A stretch of 63,284 nucleotides of DNA, filler included, from Octopus bimaculoides (lineage: Eukaryota), in NCBI RefSeq assembly GCF_001194135.2. It is 4 parts of 3 records of this genome, joined end to end, with 100 filler letters (N's around TTAATTAATTAA, not from the genome) between each part and the next. Parts side by side here need not be neighbours in the genome. Positions count along the whole stretch, not along the records: positions 31,954 to 53,407 come from NC_068981.1; 3 more parts are not named here. The stretch is one strand, 5' to 3'. How positions within the stretch are numbered: position 1 is the first letter of the stretch; every line of letters begins with the position of its first letter. The position numbers were made by a program, and so were the translations under genes. Below are positions 8,620 through 47,918 of the stretch, one piece after another. Below the pieces are notes generated by a model. The model ran no database searches. It was not told the DNA's origin and was given only the letters and a program-made list of their open reading frames with translations.

Positions 8620-9970
8620 CTCAGACATAGCAGCAATAAATGAAGCGAATCACTACCTGCAGTTGACCGTCGCCTTCACTCTAACTAACCTCTGGAAAAA
8701 TTCTTTAGACATGCTGTATATCGAAACACTTCTTATCCAAATCTGTCAGTCCAGTTTTCAAAAAAAGGAAACAAGTCTCTTGCTGTTAACTATCGCCCAA
8801 TCTCACTTACCTCGCACATCATCGAATTGTTTGAAAGCTTGGAGAGATCAAGGATAACTGGCTTCCTGAAGAGTGACAGTCTCCCAAATTCCAACCAGCA
8901 AGGCTTCGGTTGCGGCAGAGACTGCCTGACACAACTTTTACATCGCATCAATGATGTCCTCAAAGGTTTGGGATCAAGTCTGAAATCTAATGTTATATAT
9001 CTTAACTCCAGCAACGCCTTAGGCAAAGCTGATCATAACATTCTCCTGTTAAATTATACAGTATTTGAATCTGAGGTAAACTACTTGTGAACAGAACCCA
9101 ACAAGTTCTGATAGATCGAATCTACTCAATTCCTGCAAATATCAATACTGTTTTGAGCCTATTTCACTTTATAGTCGATATAAAAAACATCTCAAATGTC
9201 AACAAGTATAACAAAATAAAATTATTCACCGATATCAATGGAGAAGACGACGGAACTAAACTCCATTCTGATCTACATGCTCAGAGTCAAAAGGGCGGAC
9301 AAAAACAACATGCTGTATTTAACTTTGGAAAAGAGACTGCCCCCAAACAATCATATTCCTTTTCTTCAAAACTACTCTTGATATCAAATAATATAGAATA
9401 ATATAGAAATAATATCAAATAATATAGAAATCATATAGAAATAATTGTTGGATCACCAAAATTTTCTGTTCCAGAGAGCCAGATGTCATTATTCATCTCC
9501 CCGCTTCTTTGTACGGCTACAACTAGAACACTGCTGCCTCCTGTTATCTTTCCATACGAAACAAAAACATTACGAGATCTGAGGTACCCTATAGAGCAAT
9601 CTGTATAAAAATTAAAGGCTTGACTGAGCATCATTATTGAGACCGCCTTAAAAGGTTGAATCATTATTCTCTCCGACGACGCCGTGAACGGTGTCCCATT
9701 TGCATAACGTGGAAAATATAGCACCAGCATTGTTCAGAAGACACTGACAACAAATTCAGAATTCCTCCAAGGCCCACAACACATAAATACACTGTTACAC
9801 AGTTACTTTTTCTCAACGAGCTCTGTTCTACTTTACATTATCTCAGAACAAACAAGGAAAAGAGCACATCACATTCAAGAGATATCTGGACAGATTTCTT
9901 CAAGAGATATCAGATAAGCCACTTTAGCGGGGTACATCTCAGTCAACAACAACTCATAACTTAGATAATC
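8620..9970 (+). pseudogene. CR1-like LINE reverse transcriptase remnant
   Basis: QQGFGCGRDCLTQLLHRINDVLKGLGSSLKSNVIYLNSSNALGKADHNILL resembles the RT motif QHGFR.GRSC.TQLL...D.IYLDF.KAFDKV.H..LL. Many stops and frameshifts. Confidence 0.8.
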
Positions 9971-10089
9971 CATGGCATCACATAACTTAAAAGACAACTT
10001 AGCAGGTTGTCAGGAAGTGTTATTAAGTTAGACACGTACGCCGGGTTTATCGGAAGAAGGCAGTTCACGGTGAAATTTCAAATTTAATT

Positions 10090-10147
<58 letters not shown>

Positions 10148-10180
10148 ATCTATCTATCTTTCTATCTATCTATCTATCTT

Positions 10181-10214
<34 letters not shown>

Positions 10215-10215
10215 A

Positions 10216-10258
<43 letters not shown>

Positions 10259-10378
10259 CATCCATCCATCCATCCATCCATCCATCCATCCATCCATCTA
10301 TCTATCTATCTATCTTTCTATCTATCTATCTATCTATCCATCTATCTATCCATCTATCCATCCATCCATCTATCTATC
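10090..10378. repeat. (TCTA)n/(TCCA)n tetranucleotide array running into a gap
   Basis: Directly visible. Confidence 0.97.
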
Positions 10379-12019
10379 NNNNNNNNNNNNNNNNNNNNNN
10401 NNNNNNNNNNNNNNNNNNNNNNNNNNNNNNNNNNNNNNNNNNNNNNNNNNNNNNNNNNNNNNNNNNNNNNNNNNNNNNNNNNNNNNNNNNNNNNNNNNNN
10501 NNNNNNNNNNNNNNNNNNNNNNNNNNNNNNNNNNNNNNNNNNNNNNNNNNNNNNNNNNNNNNNNNNNNNNNNNNNNNNNNNNNNNNNNNNNNNNNNNNNN
10601 NNNNNNNNNNNNNNNNNNNNNNNNNNNNNNNNNNNNNNNNNNNNNNNNNNNNNNNNNNNNNNNNNNNNNNNNNNNNNNNNNNNNNNNNNNNNNNNNNNNN
10701 NNNNNNNNNNNNNNNNNNNNNNNNNNNNNNNNNNNNNNNNNNNNNNNNNNNNNNNNNNNNNNNNNNNNNNNNNNNNNNNNNNNNNNNNNNNNNNNNNNNN
10801 NNNNNNNNNNNNNNNNNNNNNNNNNNNNNNNNNNNNNNNNNNNNNNNNNNNNNNNNNNNNNNNNNNNNNNNNNNNNNNNNNNNNNNNNNNNNNNNNNNNN
10901 NNNNNNNNNNNNNNNNNNNNNNNNNNNNNNNNNNNNNNNNNNNNNNNNNNNNNNNNNNNNNNNNNNNNNNNNNNNNNNNNNNNNNNNNNNNNNNNNNNNN
11001 NNTAGAAATATAAGACAAATTCAGGAGACGTACGAATATTAGTGAAGCCATTATTTAAAACATCCATCTTATCGTGGGGCCGAAAAAAAAACCATCCTGA
11101 GTAATAACAGTGTTTAGGCTCAGGTTTTTTTTACAAGCCCTTGTCAGTGCGAAATATTTCAACGTTGATGATGGATGTCGTTTAACAGAAAATCACTTGA
11201 TTGTGACCTTTTGGTAAATACATAAAATAAATATCTTAAATTTATGAGAAAGTAAATAAATTCATCGCTAGACAAACATTAAGTAGACAGACAATCGTAA
11301 ATCATCTTATTTGTACAAAATGAGCTTTGTAATATATAATCATCTGAAAATCTTTTCTTGTTTACTCTAAGACTTAAGGCAAACACTTTGGTAAAGTTTT
11401 TGCGATAAATATTTCTAATTCTATTTTAATGGTGTCATTTGGAGAGACAGAATTAATCTCTCTTCATCCATCGAATCTTCGAACCGGTTTCAAATCTTGA
11501 TTGTAACTTGTTTAATTCACGTAAATAATGATCTTGTTGAAACTTGAATGTAATAACTCGAAAGAAACCTTTATGTTTTGCAACCACGTGGTTCCGTTGT
11601 ATGTTTGTTGTGTGTGTATGTGTGTGTGTGTGTGTGTGTGTATGTGTGTGCGTGCGTGTGTCATTTTCTGCATTTTCTCCCTACATCGCTTGCTAACCGA
11701 TGTAGGCTTCTGTACGTCTCTGTGACTTAGTGATCTGACAAGAAGATGACGATATAATAGGTACCAGTCTTGAAAAACAAACAAAAAAGAATACTTGGAT
11801 CAATTTGTTCGACCAAAACACTTCAAGGCGGTGCCCTAATATGGCTGCAGTTAAAGAAAACGTTAAAGGTGCCCTAACATTGCGCTAAAAAATAAATCGT
11901 TAAAAGTGGGGGAGAATGTGTTGACTATAGGTTCTGATTATTTGGATAAAGTAGGGAAAGCACAAAGGGTCTTTTTCTCTAACCATGGTCATTGTAAATC
12001 TAATAATTTCCTTGAGGAA

Positions 12020-32699: not shown

Positions 32700-32835
32700 T
32701 CCCATAACATAGCGGTTCGGCAAAAGACACAGAATAAGTACTAGGCTTACAAAGAATAAGTTTTGAAGTTAATTTGTTCGACCAAAGGCGATGCTCTAGC
32801 ATGGCCGCAGCCAAATGACTGAAATAAGTAAAAGT
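32700..32835 (+). mobile_element. SINE A 3' module
   Basis: gcggttcggcaaaagac..agaataagtactaggcttacaaagaataag...gcatggccgcagccaaatgactgaaataagtaaaag. Confidence 0.85.
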
Positions 32836-33234
32836 GCATATTATATATATATAATCTGGAAAATGATATGAGCAACATCACCTCGTTTTACGTACATATC
32901 ACCAAAATGGCAATGTGCAGCAGATGGCTCTTGTGCCTCTGGGAAGTCGCAAGATAACATCTCAGAGGCTGTTAAGTACCAAGGAACATAACTCTTGACT
33001 TTATCCTTGCTCAGTTCGTTTCGTCTTTTTCACAGTAACCACAAACAGGTTATTTTTTTACCCCGAACAATAGAGAGCAGTCGCCATATTTTCTTCCATA
33101 ACTGCCAACTCTGAAGAGCACAGGATTACATAATCGGGCTGTTATATGACAATTCATTGATACCCCAGTGCGAAACCGATTGGTAAGATCGGCCCTAATG
33201 GATATATAATATTGTTCACTTCGATTAATATACA

Positions 33235-34593: not shown

Positions 34594-34800
34594 TCTTTTC
34601 TACTCTAGGCACAAGGCCCGAAATTTTGGAGGAGGGGGCCAGTCAATTAGATCGACCCCAGTATGCAACTGGTACTTAATTTATCGACCCCGAAAGGATG
34701 AAAGGCAAAGTCGACCTCGGCGGAATTAGAACTCAGAACGTAAAGACAGACGAAATACCACTAAATATTTCGCCTGGCGTGCTAACATTTCTGCCAGCTC
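34594..34800 (-). mobile_element. SINE B, full length, standard tail
   Basis: tctactctaggcacaaggcccgaaatt...gaaaggatgaaaggcaaagtcgacctcggcgg...ctgccagctc. Confidence 0.93.
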
Positions 34801-35093
34801 ATTTTCGGTGACTCCTCCTGTAGTTTATACATACCACGTCTTTGCTCTTTGTAGGTTGTAGTTTCCGCAGTGCGCCCAGTGGATAATTCTTGCAACATTG
34901 TCATGACGTCTTTTGCATTCGCGTTATTATTATAATCCTTTTGGGGTCAATTAAATAACCAGTCGAGTGCTGGGGTCGATAAAAATAAAAATTTAATCGA
35001 GTAGACCCGTCCTAAAAAATTTCAGTCCCTTGTCTATAGCAGAAAGAACCACTGCTAGTACTACTACCACTTCTATTACAGAAAATAATAATA

Positions 35094-35134
<41 letters not shown>

Positions 35135-35156
35135 AATTATTATTATTATTATTATT

Positions 35157-35367
35157 GAGCTGGCAGAATAGTTTGCACACCGAGCAAAATACTTAGGGGC
35201 ATTTCGTCTGTCTTTACGTTCTGAGTTCAAATTCCGTCGAGGTTGACTTTGCCTTTCATCCTTTCGGGGTCGATAAATTAAGTACCAGTCAATTACTGAG
35301 GTCGATGTGATCGACTTACCCCCTCCCCACAAATTTCAGGCCTTGTGCTTATAGTAGAAAGGATTAT
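35157..35367 (+). mobile_element. SINE B, full length, standard tail
   Basis: gagctggcagaa...gactttgcctttcatcctttcggggtcgataaattaagtaccag...ggccttgtgcttatagtagaaagg. Confidence 0.93.
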
Positions 35368-39560: not shown

Positions 39561-40059
39561 AAATGGATGAATCTTTAGAACGTCTATGATTCATCCATTT
39601 TGATTTCCTGAGAAAGGAGGGGCACATTAGTTGGTCATATTGAAATACGTTCCATCAAAGTAATACAGGATTAAGCAACAACATTAAAGTTACTGTGTTC
39701 GGAGAGTTAATAGGATTTCTCATATAAAAACGCGCTGTGCAAAGTGTTACTATTTGACTGTAGACAGATATAGACATACGACAACAAGAACGTCCGTATA
39801 TGAATGCATCTAGGTGTGTATACTCTATATATGGTACTGGTTTGTTTTTTGTTCGTTTGTTTTTCAGAAAGAACATTAAGAAATTAGTGTTTTTTAATAA
39901 GTTTCATGTAATGTAACTGATAGTTCAAGAGAGAACAGCTTCGGATTACCAGCTGAATGATCGGAAAAGTGCAACTCGAAGTACTAAAATTATGAACCTT
40001 TTCAGTTATATCTTCAAGAATATTCTACAGCTATACATTGAATGATCCAGTAATTTATT

Positions 40060-41155
40060 CCTTCTCAGTGATTCAGTACACATCCAATAACCCAAAATAC
40101 CCACCCAAACTTAGATATGTTAAACTATCTCCCGAAAACAGTCAACAAAAATGCTTTGATAGTATCTTTCAACGTAGTGAATCCCGAGTCAAACATCCCT
40201 CACGACTTAGGAATTGAGGCCATTAAATTCTGGTTGGATAATTATGCAGGTGAACTTCCCTAATGCATGAAAAAATTTTCTAATAGGATTAAAATTTATT
40301 ATAGAAAATAATTACTGAAATTGCAATGGGAATGAACACAGCTTTTCCCACTCCCACACTTAGCGAATCTAGTTATGGGCTATCTAGGGATTTACATTAT
40401 ACAAAAATTACTAAGAAAATAGGGAAACTCTTTTTTCATATACATACGAGAAAACTGGAAAAAAAACATCTCGTAGATTGCTTCATTCTATGAAATGAAA
40501 GCGCAGAAAAACTAAAAGAATTTGAAGCAACCCTCAATGGAATTAATGAAGTTATTCAATTCACCACAGAATACAGCCATAACCAACTCCCATTTTCAGG
40601 CATCTTTATAAAGAGAATCAACAACCAAATAGAAACGGTTAACAATAAACCTACGGATTTCAAACAATCATCATCCATTCAACTTACGTCATTCGTGACA
40701 CACCAGAAGAAATGTCCGTTACAACCAAGCCAGAAGGATCTGCACGATATTATCCGCTACAAACATCCGTGACATAAGACTCCAAGAACTGAGAGATACA
40801 CTCCTTGACAGGAATTACCCACCAACCTTAATCGATACGAGAATACAACGAACCAAGATATTTTGTATCCATTAACTGAAACAAACAAAAAGAAATAAAT
40901 CGAAATCCTAGCATACATTTCTGCTTACAATCTCAAAAACAATGAGGCCTACATTATATTCCAAAATATAACGTTACTGAACAAAGACCCCAGGCTGAAC
41001 CAAATCCTCCAAACAAAGAGTAGAACAACCCAAATCAATGAAAAAATACTAACAAAGGCCTAACTTCACACAATGACAGCAGGACCAATAATAAAAAATA
41101 TAGAAGGCCCAACTGTGGTATACGTTTTAATCTGACAGAAGGACCAGGGAACCGT
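40060..41155 (+). pseudogene. Penelope-like element RT and start of GIY-YIG region, decayed
   Basis: LIVSFNVVNPESNIPHDLGIEAIKFWLD, IAMG...LANLVMGYL, IQFTTEYSHNQLPF, KPTDFKQ, NQARRICTI, LDRNYPPTLID, RPNCG: motifs in the order expected for a PLE RT. Confidence 0.85.
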
Positions 41156-41159
41156 TTCA

Positions 41160-41497
41160 AACAAGCCCCCCCCCCTCACAAAAGTTTCGGGCCTTGTGCC
41201 TAGAGTAGAAAAATAAATATTTGGCAGCGAGCTGGCAGGGGAGGGTGGTGAACCCTGCTGTACTCTTTCACCACAACTTTCTCTCGCTCTTACTTCCTGC
41301 TTCTGTTGTGCCTGTAATTCAAAGGGTCAGCCTTGTCACACTCTGTCACGCTGAATATCCCCGAGAACTACGTTAAGGGTACACGTGTCTGTGGAGTGCT
41401 CAGCCACTTGCATGTTAATGTCACGAGCAGGCTGTTCCGTTGATCGGATCAACTGGAACCCTCGACGTCGTAAGCGACGGAGTACCAACAACAACAA
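41160..41497 (+). mobile_element. SINE B tail followed by a chimeric SINE (B head fused to C body and tail type 2)
   Basis: gggccttgtgcctagagtagaaaa; then ggcagcgagctggcag|gggagggtggtgaaccctgctgtactc...gacggagtaccaacaac. Confidence 0.85.
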
Positions 41498-45330: not shown

Positions 45331-45460
45331 GGGCGAATAGGACAAAACATTCTGCAATTTGTATTGCTCCCCACTGTTTGTTAACTGTCAGGCAGACACA
45401 GTGGGAGAGAAGGCTGTACCTTCGAATTACAGGCACAGTCCACGCGACAAACAACTAGAC

Positions 45461-45842
45461 GTGACTGTGTGGAAAGAAGCTTGCTTCCCAACTACATGGT
45501 TCCGGGTTCAGTCCCACTGCGTGGCACCTTGGGCAAGTGTCTTCTACTATTGCTTCGGGCCAACCAATGCCTATGAGTGGATTTGGTAGGCAGAAACTGA
45601 AAGAAACCTGTCGTGTTATGTGTGTGCCTTTGTGTCTGCATTTGTCCCCCACCACCGCTTGACAACCGGTGTTGGTGTGTTTACGTCCCGTAAATTAGCG
45701 GCTCGGCAAAGGTACCGATAGAATAAGTAACTAGCGTAAAAAATAAAGTACTGGGGTTGGTTCATTCAACTTAAAATTCTTCAAGGTGGTGCTCCAGCAT
45801 GGCTGCAGTTTAATGACTGAAACAAGTAGAAGATCAAAAATA
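45461..45842 (+). mobile_element. SINE A, compact copy with an unexpanded internal microsatellite
   Basis: 5' and 3' modules joined by only gtcgtgttatgtgtgtgcctttgtgtctg. Confidence 0.9.
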
Positions 45843-45850
45843 AAGATTAT

Positions 45851-45988
45851 ATTCTTTTCTACTCTAGGCACAAGATCCGGAATTTTGGGGAAGGGGGCCA
45901 GTCGATTAGATCGACCCCAATGCGCAACTGGTACTTAATTTATCGACCCCTGAAAGGATGAAAGGCACGGTCGACCTCGGCGGAATTT
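45851..45988 (-). mobile_element. SINE B 3' half
   Basis: tctactctaggcacaag...gacctcggcggaattt. Confidence 0.9.
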
Positions 45989-46112
45989 TTTCATTTTTAT
46001 ATAACTTTCATCTCATTTACATTCGTTTTATGTTTTTTGTCCCCACTGTGGTCTTGTCTGTCCTTGTGATGTCTCCATCTATGTTTAGGGCTTTATGCCT
46101 AATAAAGAAATC
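45989..46112 (+). mobile_element. Orphan T-type 3' tail
   Basis: ttgtctgtccttgtgatgtctccatctatgtttagggc...aataaagaaatc; similar to 47830-47918 and 48045-48104. Confidence 0.7.
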
Positions 46113-46252
46113 AGTATTTCGTCTGTCTCTACGTTAGTTCAAATTCCGCCGAGGTCGACTTTGCCTTTCATCCTTTCAGGGTCGATAAATTGAGATCTAA
46201 TCGTTTGGCCCACTCCCCAAAGAATTCAGGCCTTGTGCCTAGAGTAGAAAAG
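46113..46252 (+). mobile_element. SINE B 3' part starting at the gtatttcgtctg site
   Basis: agtatttcgtctgtctctacg...ggccttgtgcctagagtagaaaag. Confidence 0.9.
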
Positions 46253-46330
46253 TATATATTTATTTATTCAGGACGGTGAGCTAGCAGAAACGTTAACACG
46301 CCGTGCGAAATGCTCAGCGGTATCCCGTCT

Positions 46331-47918
46331 CTGTGAAGTTAATACATGGGGATTTTGAATAGATTTTGTGCTGCTCTGCAGTGGTTTGGGTGTTTACGTG
46401 TGTAGTTTGTTTGAGCTTTCTTCTCTCGTAAGAGAAGAGACAGCTGGTTGAAGAATGTCTGAAGACAGTTATAGTTACTCAGACATGTCATCGTCCGAGG
46501 AGAGGTTGCTGGAGGCAGTTAAGACAACAGACTAGAAACTGATGAAAGAGAAGCGGAATTTTGCTGATGTAGCAAGGTGTAAGGAAACAGAAGTGGATAT
46601 CAGGGAATTCGGAAGACACAAAGAAGAAATGAACCGAGATGGGTTTGAAGTGAAGCTGTCGCCCCCGCAAGAGGTTAAAAACGGAATAAGGGAAAAGACG
46701 ATACTCTATCGAGCCTTTTCGCTAAATAAAGGAAGAATAGACGTCGCCACGACAGAACAAATAGAAAAGACGTTTTAGCAGATTTTGGAAGACATAATAT
46801 ACTTGACTAGAGGTTCAACATTTGGAACAGTAGAAATGAGGGTTCGTAATGCAGCAGCAGCAAGGAAACATGCAGCGTCGACAATTCGGAGCGAAGAAGT
46901 GGTGCTGTTGCCCACGTATAGAGGCATGAGAGCAACAAGGGTCACAGTTGAAGGAATCCCACCGGAGATTGATGTGACCTGAGTGGCAGATGCGGTCCTC
47001 TTTGGTAATGAGGACAATATAATGGTGCTCCAGGCCAAGAAAAAAGAGTGCGTCAACTGGAGATGTCAATCACTGGAGATGATAGTCCAAGGTTCAAAAG
47101 AAATGATGGAAAAGATTACGGAAACCATAATTATGGAAGAAACAATTATGACTGTCAGGGCGGAAGGAAGAGTTCCACGCTGCTTTAAATGTGGCCTGAA
47201 GGGACACATAAGAGCAGAATGTACATCAAAGCCAAGAAAACAGCGACCAGAAAATACGGAAGAGAAGATAGAAGAGAGCCGCAGAAAGGAAGTAACCGAA
47301 AAAGAAAAGGAAGTAGCGGAAACAGGAAAAAATAAATGGCAAAATGTAACAGCAAAAAAATGAAAAAAGACAAGTGAGCTAAACTGTAACCCACATTCCA
47401 CACCCTCTCAGACCCACCCACTCCCTGCAGACACTAGGCCTATCCATTCCCATCCGACACAAAAACAAGAGACAAACACATACAAAGAAACCCAAAACCC
47501 CTCCTGTTAAGGGATATGGCGGAATGGGACATAAAGTGTATTGGAACTGCGGGGTCTGATAATGTGGAGGAACATCACTTGTGTGTAATACCAGATAAGA
47601 AGCAAGAGGAAAAATTAGAAGAGTATATGGTTGGATTTTGTTTTTGGGAGGTGGACTGCAGCTGGAGTTCATTCCCAGGATTTACTACGTACGATGGGTG
47701 GTCGGAGGAAACGGGTATCGATGTGTTAGAAGGTTCAGGAATTAAAAAGTAGAAAATGAGGCCACTCGTGGGTGGGGCGAGTGGTTCCATTTCCATTTTA
47801 TCATTTTCATGTCTTCATACGTTATAACATTCATTTCTATTTTTTTTATACATGTTTTATGTCCCACGTGTTTTGCTTGTCACCTCTATGCATAGCCCGC
47901 ATGGGTAATAAAGAAACT
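46331..47918 (+). mobile_element. ORF1-only non-LTR retroelement (Tx1/L1-like ORF1; no endonuclease or RT)
   Basis: Bounded by a degenerate 12-bp duplication ggtatcccgtct / ggtatttcttct. Carries a gag-like ORF1, a T-rich 3' region and an aataaagaaa end. Confidence 0.8.
46455..47363 (+). pseudogene. Retroelement ORF1 with CX2CX4HX4C zinc knuckle; one frame with three internal stops
   Basis: Track ORFs 46542, 46785 and 46983 are all in frame with ATG 46455. Motifs LPTYRGMRATRVTVEGIPPEI and VRAEGRVPRCFKCGLKGHIRAEC, followed by a K/E-rich tail. A possible frameshifted extension lies at 47516-47752. Confidence 0.85.

What the first reader, a model, noticed from the sequence alone, without database searches (positions are those of the whole stretch)
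46331..47918. ORF1-only Tx1-like retroposon inserted inside SINE B
Seen: a 1588-bp insert splits a SINE B at ggtatttcgtct, duplicated degenerately at both ends (46319-46330, 47919-47930). It encodes one gag-like ORF1 (46455-47363, single frame, three stops, CFKCGLKGHIRAEC knuckle), a possible frameshifted extension (47516-47752), a T-rich UTR and an aataaagaaa end. No endonuclease or RT is recognisable. Known: Tx1-clade LINEs have such ORF1s and are often sequence-specific (Xenopus Tx1L targets another transposon), and mammalian HAL1 is an ORF1-only L1 derivative. Inference: a HAL1-like non-autonomous family that targets a SINE.
Basis: partly seen in the sequence, partly recalled or inferred. 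Interest (0 to 1): 0.85.

Follow-up and report, generated by a model that had tools for sequence, protein, structure and literature searches.

The report
ORF1-only LINE inside an octopus SINE
A 1.6-kb octopus mobile element that keeps only the RNA-binding gene of a Tx1-like LINE sits inside a SINE at a short sequence where relatives also insert, making it a new variant of known retrotransposon behaviour, not a new kind of element.

Summary
At 46331-47918 a 1588-bp insert splits a SINE, with a 12-bp duplication of SINE sequence at both ends. It has one decayed ORF1 with a CCHC knuckle, a T-rich 3' UTR ending aataaagaaa, and no endonuclease or RT.

Related octopus DNA shows what it is. The ORF1 belongs to a cephalopod LINE group whose full-length members carry ORF1 (tandem RRMs plus CCHC) and ORF2 (APE, RT, zf-RVT), and end in the same 3' tail.

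Three more ORF1-only elements of 1.6-1.75 kb, two with intact ORFs, occur in O. sinensis and O. vulgaris. The architecture therefore recurs.

The tail is also the 3' end of the host SINE subfamily (SINE B'), and a tail subtype matches ordinary SINE B.

Five of about 13 tail-to-flank junctions begin (A/G)GTAYTT. Four are at SINE B position 43, and three have target-site duplications (chance about 1e-11). The other ORF1-only copies lie elsewhere, so this is a shared hot spot, not strict specificity.

Verdict: a HAL1-like, probably Tx1-clade, non-autonomous element. The clade has not been tested by phylogeny. Interest is moderate.

The parts
46254..46270 (+). 5' copy of the outer 17-bp target-site duplication, ATATATTTATTTATTCA, flanking the whole SINE B'/insert composite
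   Evidence: Read directly. It is identical to 48105-48121 (17/17) and sits exactly at the SINE 5' end.
46271..46330 (+). Head of the host SINE (SINE B' subfamily). Its last 12 nt, 46319-46330 (ggtatcccgtct), are the 5' copy of the inner target-site duplication.
   Evidence: Alignment to intact SINE B copies.
46331..46454 (+). 5' UTR of the ORF1-only element
   Evidence: Significant local similarity to the 5' UTR of a related element at L014 9740-10000 (score 35 against a shuffle maximum of 31).
46455..47363 (+). Decayed ORF1: type I ORF1p with a tandem-RRM core and one CCHC knuckle at about 47178-47228. Three internal stops, no frameshift.
   Evidence: - Translation.
- Pfam zf-CCHC.
- Homologues are only cephalopod; 613 cluster representatives have E<=1e-3.
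- AF2 model of homologue P0004 (core pLDDT >90) matches tandem-RRM proteins in the PDB.
47364..47752 (+). Former linker and C-terminal part of ORF1, now out of frame. Includes the 78-aa ORF at 47516-47752.
   Evidence: Collinear DNA alignment with the intact 463-aa ORF of L030 2666-4057. Protein similarity is only marginal.
47753..47918 (+). 3' UTR ending in the group's canonical tail. Candidate hairpin: GCCC 47895-47898, loop 47899-47902, GGGT 47903-47906, followed by AATAAAGAAAct.
   Evidence: - Tails A, B and C are mutually significant.
- Tail HMM hit, E=1.7e-8.
- blastn to the 3' UTR of the L030 ORF1-only element: 71% over 132 nt, E=2e-7.
- Covariation of the stem.
47919..48042 (+). Body of the host SINE B' from consensus position 43. 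Its first 12 nt, 47919-47930 (ggtatttcttct), are the 3' copy of the inner duplication.
   Evidence: The subfamily-diagnostic strings CGCTACG, ATTAAATAAGTA and GATTTAATCC are shared with L030 420-649, and in slightly variant form with L029 5990-6164 and 18017-18230.
48043..48104 (+). LINE-type tail that forms the 3' end of SINE B' (tail C)
   Evidence: - Tail HMM, E=9.6e-11.
- The same junction, SINE position ~163 joined to a ~63-nt tail, recurs at L030 588-649, L029 6103-6164 and L029 18185-18230.
48105..48121 (+). 3' copy of the outer 17-bp target-site duplication
45989..46112 (+). Second, 5'-truncated copy of a diverged tail of the same group (tail B), joined to another SINE B at the same position
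   Evidence: - Local alignments against tails A and C.
- HMM, E=5.3e-9.
- 79% identity over 128 nt to L014 12284-12164.
46113..46252 (+). SINE B from consensus position ~43 (agtatttcgtctg...) to its 3' end, downstream of tail B
45853..45988 (-). Inverted, 5'-truncated SINE B (positions 74-208) directly upstream of tail B. Its origin is unresolved.

Best explanation
The insert is a non-autonomous, ORF1-only derivative of a cephalopod LINE group. That group is of L1/Tx1 type.

**The group.**
- Its autonomous members encode a type I ORF1 protein (tandem RRMs, one CCHC knuckle, a charged linker and a small C-terminal region).
- They also encode an ORF2 with an AP-endonuclease, a reverse transcriptase and a zf-RVT domain.
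- They end in a conserved tail, ...TGTCCCCTCTrTGTTTAGCCCCTTGTGGGyAATAAAGAAAT, with no poly(A).

**How the ORF1-only element moves (inferred).** It keeps the 5' UTR, ORF1 and the 3' UTR with the tail. Its RNA is therefore copied in trans by the ORF2 protein of a full-length relative, by target-primed reverse transcription starting at the tail.

**History of this locus (shown by sequence).**
1. A SINE B' landed in ATATATTTATTTATTCA, giving a 17-bp TSD. SINE B' is a SINE B subfamily whose last ~60 nt are this same LINE tail.
2. The ORF1-only element inserted into that SINE at GGTATTTCGTCT, giving a 12-bp TSD.
3. ORF1 has since decayed (three stops, reading frame lost after the knuckle), so this copy is dead.

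**Target choice (shown as a statistical preference; the cause is inferred to be the endonuclease).** Elements carrying this tail often insert so that the duplicated target begins (A/G)GTAYTT. SINE B offers that heptamer at position 43, and in antisense near position 120. That makes the very abundant SINE a hot spot. The preference is not exclusive.
For: **Anatomy and both TSD pairs.**

**ORF2 is absent.**

**Homologues are cephalopod only.**

**Full-length relatives.**
- L013 (O. vulgaris) is a tandem array of ~5.28-kb units with ORF1, a 1132-aa ORF2 (Exo_endo_phos, RVT_1, zf-RVT) and the tail.
- Further full-length copies are in L015, L016 and L030.

**ORF1-only relatives.** L030 2495-4185, L029 9459-11066 and L031 ~9925-11650. 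The first two are collinear with the window element over their full length.

**ORF1 fold.** AF2 gives mean pLDDT 78.8, with the core above 90. The top PDB matches are tandem-RRM proteins (NONO/SFPQ, Prp24, raver1), probability about 1.

**Shared tail.**
- The tail HMM finds 17 tails.
- SINE B' recurs four times.
- The SINE B 3' end matches the L031 tail: score 28-30 against a shuffle maximum of 23-26, 0/1000.
- Stem covariation: 90.5% of cells paired against 70.5% in shuffles, 15 double-sided changes, and at most 49% when the partners are slid.

**Target preference.**
- Junctions at window 47918/19 (TSD 12), window 46112/13, L014 9529(-) (TSD 11, in a diverged SINE B), L030 649/650, and L029 6163/64 (TSD 6-7, in an inverted SINE B at GGTACTT).
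- RGTAYTT occupies 5e-4 of positions in 124 kb of octopus DNA. Four or five of 12 junctions then gives P of about 3e-11 and 2e-14 respectively.

**Literature.**
- Tx1-clade elements often prefer specific targets, including other transposons, and their SINE partners share the target (PMC4494074).
- Type I ORF1p fits Tx1 (PMC5203782).
Against: - **Small, biased sample.** Only four ORF1-only elements and about 13 junctions were available. The loci were reached through ORF1 gene models, not a genome census.
- **Divergence.** The ORF1-only elements are very diverged: window against L030 or L029 is 35-36% amino-acid identity, no closer than to the full-length L013. Common descent of the ORF1-only state is unproven.
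- **Hot spot not seen in the others.** None of the other ORF1-only copies sits at the SINE hot spot.
- **Possible non-independence.** Some tail|GGTATTT junctions may be copies of a composite and not independent events. L030 420-815 is flanked by a single ~17-nt TSD (read from the sequence). Window tail B lacks a SINE head upstream.
- **Post hoc motif.** The heptamer was defined after seeing the data.
- **Inner versus outer TSD.** The inner TSD (9/12) is more decayed than the outer (17/17), which mildly favours movement of the composite as a unit.
- **Clade.** Assignment to Tx1 rests on domain content, elimination and literature, not on an RT tree.
- **Hairpin.** It is thermodynamically unremarkable (z = -0.3 to -1.2), and for two tails the MFE structure uses a different pairing.
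Confidence: 0.8

Rival explanations
1. The recurring tail|GGTATTT junction does not reflect target choice. Either composites (element plus downstream SINE B part) are transcribed and retrotransposed as units using the SINE's own 3' end, or the reverse transcriptase copying SINE B RNA stalls at position 43 and jumps to the 3' end of a tail-bearing RNA. On this reading the window composite arrived ready-made.
For: - L030 420-815 (SINE B' followed by SINE B 43-208) has no SINE head upstream and is flanked by one ~17-nt repeat, AATATAAGAAyGwAAA (read from the sequence).
- Window tail B plus SINE B 43-205 is a 5'-truncated unit with no head upstream.
- The window composite has a perfect 17-bp outer TSD but a decayed 9/12 inner one.
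Against: - Three junctions have the expected short duplication of SINE sequence on both sides of the insert: window 12 bp, L014 11 bp, L029 6-7 bp. Template jumping does not produce this.
- The L029 case is in an inverted SINE at a different position that carries the same heptamer.
- The inserted elements differ: an ORF1-only element, two diverged tails, and SINE B'.
- With ~7% decay, 0 mismatches in 17 AT-rich bases is not very unlikely (about 0.1 by my estimate).
Confidence: 0.2
2. The window element is a unique internal deletion of an ordinary full-length LINE copy. The deletion arose at this locus or during one retrotransposition event, and there is no ORF1-only lineage.
For: - Internal deletions with other breakpoints exist: L014 9763-10670 joins half of ORF1 directly to a tail.
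- The window ORF1 is no closer to the other ORF1-only elements than to a full-length one.
Against: - Three further elements in two other species have the same layout: a complete ORF1, then within tens of bases (about 500 in L031) a 3' UTR and tail. Each is flanked by a repeat; the L031 one may be the start of a neighbouring LINE rather than a TSD. L030 and L031 have intact ORFs.
- The window 3' UTR matches that of the L030 ORF1-only element but not the full-length units in the same locus.
Confidence: 0.07
3. The ORF is a gag remnant of an LTR retrotransposon or endogenous retrovirus, or a processed pseudogene of a host CCHC protein, that happens to lie in a SINE.
For: The CCHC knuckle gives weak hits to retroviral nucleocapsids (E above 1).
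Against: - The repeat scan of the piece listed no long direct repeats flanking the insert.
- The fold is tandem RRM, not capsid.
- Homologues sit directly upstream of APE-RT ORF2s.
- The element has the group's 5' UTR and tail, and a TPRT-type TSD.
Confidence: 0.02

Closest known systems
HAL1 (half-L1) of mammals
   Same: A non-autonomous LINE derivative that keeps the LINE ends and encodes only ORF1p. HAL1 arose several times independently (PMC5753468). That matches the recurrent but diverged ORF1-only elements seen here.
   Different: - HAL1 derives from mammalian L1 with a type II (Transposase_22) ORF1p and a poly(A) tail.
- This element has a type I ORF1p (RRMs plus CCHC) and a specific non-poly(A) tail.
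- Its host is a cephalopod, and it shows a sequence hot spot for insertion.
Tx1L of Xenopus, and Tx1-Mar with SINEU of crocodilians (Tx1 clade)
   Same: - APE-type LINEs with a target preference for another transposon.
- In crocodilians the SINE partner shares the LINE's target preference. The working criterion there is a given target in more than 20% of flanks (PMC4494074).
- Here about 5 of 13 flanks share a target, and SINE B' uses the same site.
   Different: - The target here is a SINE, through a short heptamer, not a DNA transposon.
- The preference is looser.
- Membership of the Tx1 clade was not tested by phylogeny.
- The inserted copy lacks ORF2.
Stringent-type LINE/SINE pairs that share a 3' tail stem-loop, such as eel UnaL2/UnaSINE1 (from my own knowledge; general principle cited in PMC4494074)
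   Same: SINE and LINE share a specific 3' tail with no poly(A). A short stem with compensatory changes precedes an A-rich end.
   Different: - These pairs belong to a different clade (L2).
- Recognition of the tail by the RT is not shown here.
- The stem is only 4 bp and thermodynamically weak.
L1-Tx1 families annotated in Octopus vulgaris (PMC13282606)
   Same: Same host genus. Among the LINE subdivisions in that paper's table of recently active insertions (RTE, Dong-R4, CR1, L1-Tx1, Hero, R2), L1-Tx1 is the only one that fits an APE+RT+zf-RVT ORF2 with a CCHC ORF1.
   Different: The main text of that paper does not mention ORF1 or non-autonomous elements, and discusses neither SINE targeting nor LINE arrays (term search). 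I could not compare sequences with its library.

Membership tests
Tx1 clade / L1 group non-LTR retrotransposons | ORF2 with an N-terminal AP-type endonuclease followed by a reverse transcriptase (plus a C-terminal zinc-binding motif) | tested here: met
   Met for the full-length relatives: L013 ORF2 has Exo_endo_phos 1.9e-15, RVT_1 8.2e-31 and zf-RVT 5.4e-9. The window element itself has no ORF2, as expected for a non-autonomous derivative.
Tx1 clade / L1 group non-LTR retrotransposons | RT-domain phylogeny (RTclass1-type) places the element in the Tx1 clade | not tested
   - No reference RT set was available.
- Indirect evidence only: the named ORF2 hits include one auto-named 'Transposon TX1 149 kDa protein'.
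- L1-Tx1 is the only L1-group superfamily listed for O. vulgaris.
Tx1 clade / L1 group non-LTR retrotransposons | Type I ORF1p: at least one RRM plus a CCHC knuckle | tested here: met
   - CCHC is present, though Pfam scores it just under cut-off (20.6 against 20.8 bits).
- The AF2 model of a homologue matches tandem-RRM proteins.
- Definition taken from PMC5203782.
Tx1 clade / L1 group non-LTR retrotransposons | Target sequence preference (one target type in more than 20% of flanks, the criterion of PMC4494074) | tested here: met
   About 5 of 13 junctions begin RGTAYTT, four of them at SINE B position 43. The sample is small and biased, and the junctions may not all be independent.
Tx1 clade / L1 group non-LTR retrotransposons | Hallmarks of target-primed reverse transcription: variable TSDs and 5' truncation | tested here: met
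   TSDs of 6-20 bp, and 5'-truncated copies of 58-130 nt.
HAL1 (half-L1) | LINE ends retained and only ORF1p encoded | tested here: met
HAL1 (half-L1) | Derived from mammalian L1 with a Transposase_22 (type II) ORF1p | tested here: not met
   There is no Transposase_22 hit. ORF1 is RRM plus CCHC, and the host is a cephalopod. The element works like HAL1 but is not a member.
HAL1 (half-L1) | Amplified in trans as a multi-copy family | tested here: inconclusive
   Four flanked ORF1-only elements in three species, but at 35-48% amino-acid identity. One further gene-model fragment is 90% identical over 40 aa (P0003). No census was possible.
SINE-LINE partnership through a shared 3' tail | The SINE 3' end is homologous to the LINE 3' end | tested here: met
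   - SINE B' carries a ~63-nt tail in four copies.
- The SINE B end matches the L031 tail, 0/1000 shuffles.
- It was not significant against the window's own tails.
SINE-LINE partnership through a shared 3' tail | A conserved 3' stem-loop | tested here: inconclusive
   Covariation is positive. Folding energies are not better than shuffles, and there is an alternative pairing. The rows are related, so few events are independent.
SINE-LINE partnership through a shared 3' tail | The LINE ORF2 protein mobilises the SINE or ORF1-only RNA | not testable with these tools
   This needs a retrotransposition assay.
LTR retrotransposon / retroviral Gag | Flanking LTRs and a capsid-nucleocapsid architecture | tested here: not met
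   The repeat scan listed no long terminal direct repeats around the insert. The fold is tandem RRM. Only the knuckle gives weak nucleocapsid hits, E above 1.

The most novel reading that the evidence does not exclude
ORF1-only elements form an old, self-sustaining parasitic lineage of a Tx1-like LINE in octopods. They keep ORF1 under purifying selection (L030 against L029, dN/dS about 0.2). The same LINE group, through two tail subtypes, is the driver of the SINE B and SINE B' expansions that dominate octopus genomes. Its endonuclease prefers a heptamer inside those SINEs, so LINE, half-LINE and SINE pile into each other and into tandem arrays.
Probability: 0.3. Interest if true: 0.6.

Novelty: new variant of a known kind. 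Interest (0 to 1): 0.45.

Why it matters
SINEs and LINEs are the largest repeat classes of octopus genomes (11.6% and 12.9% in O. vulgaris, PMC13282606). I did not find a described LINE partner for these SINEs in the papers I read.

This locus and its relatives point to three things:
- A concrete partner group, identified by the shared tail.
- Half-LINE (ORF1-only) parasites outside mammals and outside L1 proper.
- A simple, testable target rule (GGTAYTT) that would explain the nested SINE/LINE clusters and tandem LINE arrays.

There is also a practical point. ORF1 fragments of this group are fused into many octopus gene models, so recognising them would clean up annotation.

Tried and rejected
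1. **Finding octopus DNA in metagenome collections.** A protein-pattern scan found no relatives. A junction-pattern scan gave 12 chance hits with no SINE B in them.
2. **Exact look-ups of the closest gene models.** P0001 and P0002 are not on record, so no DNA of the window's own subfamily could be fetched.
3. **Window tails as homologues of the SINE B 3' end.** Not significant. The link became significant only with the L031 tail subtype.
4. **Mapping the ORF2 deletion breakpoints.** I looked for a 3' UTR motif in L013. By eye it looked plausible, but a search of the whole unit put the best hits elsewhere and they were not significant. I make no claim about breakpoints.
5. **Splicing at the GGTAAGT motif as the origin of the ORF1-only form.** Rejected, because the motif is retained in the ORF1-only copies.
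6. **dN/dS with the window ORF1.** Synonymous sites are saturated.
7. **Short Logan contigs (L017-L028).** They end inside the element and say nothing about the 3' structure.
8. **Sequence search of the PDB with an ORF1 profile.** Only the knuckle matched.
9. **Rfam on SINE B.** No hit.
10. **Pfam on the decayed coding-like stretch 39.9-41.2 kb.** No hit.
11. **Twin priming as the cause of the inverted SINE next to tail B.** It does not fit the order of the segments.
Full report
**Source and setting.** The piece (31954-53407) is AT-rich animal DNA full of SINEs, microsatellites and scaffold gaps. Every protein relative of the ORF is cephalopod, and the closest are Octopus bimaculoides gene models. 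I take the source to be an octopus.

**Observation.**
- I aligned the flanks of the insert with two intact copies of the SINE (35156-35363 +, 34594-34801 -).
- The SINE head stops at 46330 and the SINE resumes at 47919.
- The 12 consensus bases GGTATTTCGTCT are present on both sides, as ggtatcccgtct and ggtatttcttct. This is a target-site duplication (TSD) of SINE sequence, somewhat decayed.
- The insert is 1588 bp.
- ORF1 (46455-47363) is in one frame, with three internal stops and the knuckle CFKCGLKGHIRAEC. Pfam zf-CCHC scores just under threshold.
- tblastn with a related 1131-aa ORF2 finds no endonuclease or RT remnant anywhere in the piece.
- The 3' UTR is T-rich and ends aataaagaaact.

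- The SINE plus insert (46271-48104) is flanked by a perfect 17-bp repeat, ATATATTTATTTATTCA (46254-46270 and 48105-48121).
- The host SINE does not end like ordinary SINE B. It ends in a ~60-nt sequence related to the insert's own 3' end (tail C, about 48043-48102).
- About 1.8 kb upstream, a 5'-truncated, diverged copy of the same kind of tail (tail B, about 45989-46112) abuts another SINE B at the same position (...aataaagaaatc|agtatttcgtctg).
- The three tails are mutually similar beyond all shuffles.

**Relatives.**
- The word-indexed protein search gave only three O. bimaculoides models.
- A profile search of the representative library gave 613 proteins with E<=1e-3. The named ones were from O. 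vulgaris, O. sinensis, O. bimaculoides and Argonauta. Several are chimeric gene models fused to host domains.
- Fetching DNA around some of them was decisive:
  - L013 (O. vulgaris) is a head-to-tail array of ~5.28-kb LINEs. Each has a 5' UTR, an ORF1 of about 470 aa, a 1132-aa ORF2 and a 3' UTR ending ...ttgtcccctctttgttggccccttgtgggtaaataaa.
  - That ORF2 has Exo_endo_phos, RVT_1 and zf-RVT.
  - L015 and L030 (O. sinensis) and contig L016 hold further full-length copies.
- So autonomous elements with a homologous ORF1 and the same tail type exist.

**ORF1-only relatives.** tblastn finds no ORF2 match inside any of these three elements.

| Locus | Species | Length | ORF | Flanking repeat |
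|---|---|---|---|---|
| L030 2495-4185 | O. sinensis | about 1.7 kb | intact, 463 aa, then 3' UTR and tail | 16-bp TSD, GGATGTGATATAATGA |
| L029 9459-11066 | O. sinensis | about 1.6 kb | 384 aa, then frameshifts | ~20-bp duplication of SINE B positions ~9-29 |
| L031 ~9925-11650 | O. vulgaris | about 1.75 kb | intact, 379 aa, ~500-nt UTR, tail | ~20-bp repeat by eye, possibly the start of a neighbouring LINE |

- The window element, L030 and L029 align collinearly end to end.
- The window's 3' UTR hits the L030 ORF1-only element (71% over 132 nt, E=2e-7) but not the full-length units in the same locus.
- L014 9763-10670 (O. bimaculoides) is a different deletion form, with half of ORF1 joined directly to a tail.
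- The proteins are far apart. The window ORF1 is 35-36% identical to L030, L029 and L013 alike. L030 against L029 is 48%, with dN/dS about 0.2 at saturated dS.
- The ORF1-only layout therefore recurs, and in some copies it is coding-competent.
- Whether it arose once or several times is open.
- My attempt to map common breakpoints onto L013 failed objective tests.

**ORF1 protein.**
- An AlphaFold model of the intact homologue P0004, using a 67-row alignment, is confident in the core (pLDDT above 90 for about residues 70-280).
- Its best PDB matches are all tandem-RRM proteins: NONO/SFPQ/PSPC1, Prp24 and raver1 (E from 2.5e-4, probability about 1). Global TM-scores are low because the domain orientations differ.
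- With the knuckle, this is a type I ORF1p. That type is described for plant L1 and for Tx1-like elements of non-mammalian animals (PMC5203782).
- The window's 78-aa ORF (47516-47752) lies where the C-terminal region of intact ORF1s lies. It has only marginal protein similarity to them.

**Tail and SINE partnership.**
- A profile of the tails finds 17 tails in about 145 kb of octopus DNA.
- The consensus is ...TGTCCCCTCTrTGTTTAG-CCC-CTTGT-GGG-yAATAAAGAAAT.
- A 4-bp stem around the CTTGT loop is paired in 90.5% of cells, against 70.5% in shuffles and at most 49% when slid. Pairs 2 and 3 are flipped together (C-G to G-C) in tail B and in SINE B.
- Predicted folding energies are not better than shuffles, and two tails prefer another pairing. 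I treat the stem as a candidate only.
- 'SINE B'' is SINE B positions 1 to ~163 joined to a ~63-nt tail. It recurs in the window, at L030 420-649, and at L029 5990-6164 and 18017-18230. The window and L030 copies share the subfamily-diagnostic strings; the two L029 copies carry them in part or in variant form.
- The 3' end of ordinary SINE B matches the tail of the L031 element (AGGCCTTGTGCCTAtAaTAaAgAGAA; 0/1000 shuffles).
- I infer that both SINE variants use this LINE group's machinery.

**Target sites.** I read every tail-to-flank junction. Five begin with the heptamer:

| Junction | Flank begins | TSD | Target |
|---|---|---|---|
| window 47918/19 | ggtatttcttctg | 12 bp | SINE B' position 43 |
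| window 46112/13 | agtatttcgtctg | none seen | SINE B position 43 |
| L014 9529 (-) | ggtatttaacc | 11 bp | diverged SINE B; head present upstream; 78-nt insert |
| L030 649/650 | aggtatttcatctg | none seen | SINE B 43-208 |
| L029 6163/64 | aggtactt | 6-7 bp | inverted SINE B, at a different position |

The other junctions lie elsewhere:
- unique sequence (L014 12164, 15-bp TSD)
- AT-rich sequence (window tail C; L029 18230)
- an (ATT)n microsatellite (L015)
- SINE B position 9 (L029 11066)
- unclassified sequence, perhaps the start of a neighbouring LINE (L031 11650)
- the very 5' end of another LINE, which gives tandem arrays (L013, L014, L030).

RGTAYTT starts 5e-4 of positions in these sequences, so 4-5 of 12 is about 1e-11 or less.

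Caveats:
- The motif was defined after the fact.
- The loci are a biased sample.
- Some junctions may be inherited within composites. L030 420-815 has a single outer TSD, and window tail B lacks a SINE head.

Even so, there are three TSD-bearing cases involving different inserted elements, one of them on the other strand of the SINE. This favours a real, non-exclusive sequence preference.

**Mechanism.**
- Shown: the anatomy, both TSD pairs, the absence of ORF2, the existence of autonomous relatives and of ORF1-only relatives, the shared tail, and the enrichment of the heptamer.
- Inferred:
  - The ORF1-only RNA is reverse-transcribed in trans from its tail by a relative's ORF2 protein.
  - The endonuclease causes the site preference.
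  - SINE B' arose when a 5'-truncated LINE tail became the 3' end of a SINE B transcript.
- Order of events here: SINE B' inserted first (17-bp TSD), then the ORF1-only element (12-bp TSD), then decay.
- The alternative, that the composite moved as a unit, is mildly favoured by the perfect outer and decayed inner TSD. It is not required.

**Comparison and novelty.**
- Functionally this is a HAL1 analogue: an ORF1p-only LINE derivative. HAL1 itself arose repeatedly (PMC5753468). It is not a HAL1 member, because the ORF1 type, tail and host differ.
- Preference of Tx1-clade LINEs for other transposons, and SINE partners sharing that preference, are known (PMC4494074).
- L1-Tx1 families are annotated in O. 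vulgaris (PMC13282606). The main text of that paper does not mention ORF1-only forms or SINE targeting.
- I therefore rate it a new variant of known kinds, of moderate interest.
- Tx1 membership remains to be tested by RT phylogeny.

Noticed in passing
window 45853-46252: An inverted, 5'-truncated SINE B (positions 74-208) abuts a 124-nt LINE tail, which is followed by SINE B 43-205. The pair forms an inverted repeat with a ~148-nt spacer. I found no TSD for it, and neither twin priming nor simple nesting explains the order of the segments.
   Followed up: partly
window 39900-41215: An A-rich, decayed coding-like stretch. By eye it has motifs reminiscent of a Penelope-like RT, but there is no Pfam hit. 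It ends in a 45-nt copy of the SINE B 3' end at 41168-41213, so it may be another element sharing that tail, or a heavily truncated SINE.
   Followed up: partly
L013 1-13026; L030 2495-20850: Full-length LINEs of this group stand in head-to-tail arrays. Each tail is joined directly to the first bases of the next 5' UTR. In L030 the units differ (64-96% ORF2 identity to L013), and one unit is ORF1-only. This suggests repeated insertion at LINE 5' ends rather than tandem duplication.
   Followed up: partly
L014 9763-10670: An internally deleted element in O. bimaculoides: 5' UTR and about 190 codons of ORF1 joined directly to a ~100-nt tail. It is followed immediately by the 5' end of a LINE of another subfamily.
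   Followed up: partly
L013 2050-2062; L030 4026-4036; L029 10900-10910; L031 ~11150: The end of ORF1 and start of ORF2 carries GGTAAGTGATG, which contains a consensus-like 5' splice donor (GGTAAGT). It is retained in the ORF1-only elements.
   Followed up: no
proteins P0003, P0023, P0049, P0106, P0117: Octopus gene models fuse ORF1 fragments of this LINE group to host-type domains: ISXO2-like transposase, LDL-receptor class A, C2H2 fingers, WD40 and astacin. These are either annotation artefacts or exonised transposon fragments.
   Followed up: no
L017-L020 (Logan contigs from runs SRR11869384-94): The same ~1.7-kb contig, with an intact 294-aa ORF1 followed by an A/C-rich non-coding stretch, was assembled independently from several sequencing runs. 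It may be an expressed or multi-copy ORF1-bearing element of an unidentified cephalopod.
   Followed up: no
window 45456-45550 and 50908-51002; 45783-45839, 32785-32841 and 51511-51567; 41337-41483 and 48445-48591: Other repeat families in the piece: a tRNA-like SINE head (GGTTCCGGGTTCAGTCCC), a second SINE-like family, and a 147-nt pair at 90% identity.
   Followed up: no
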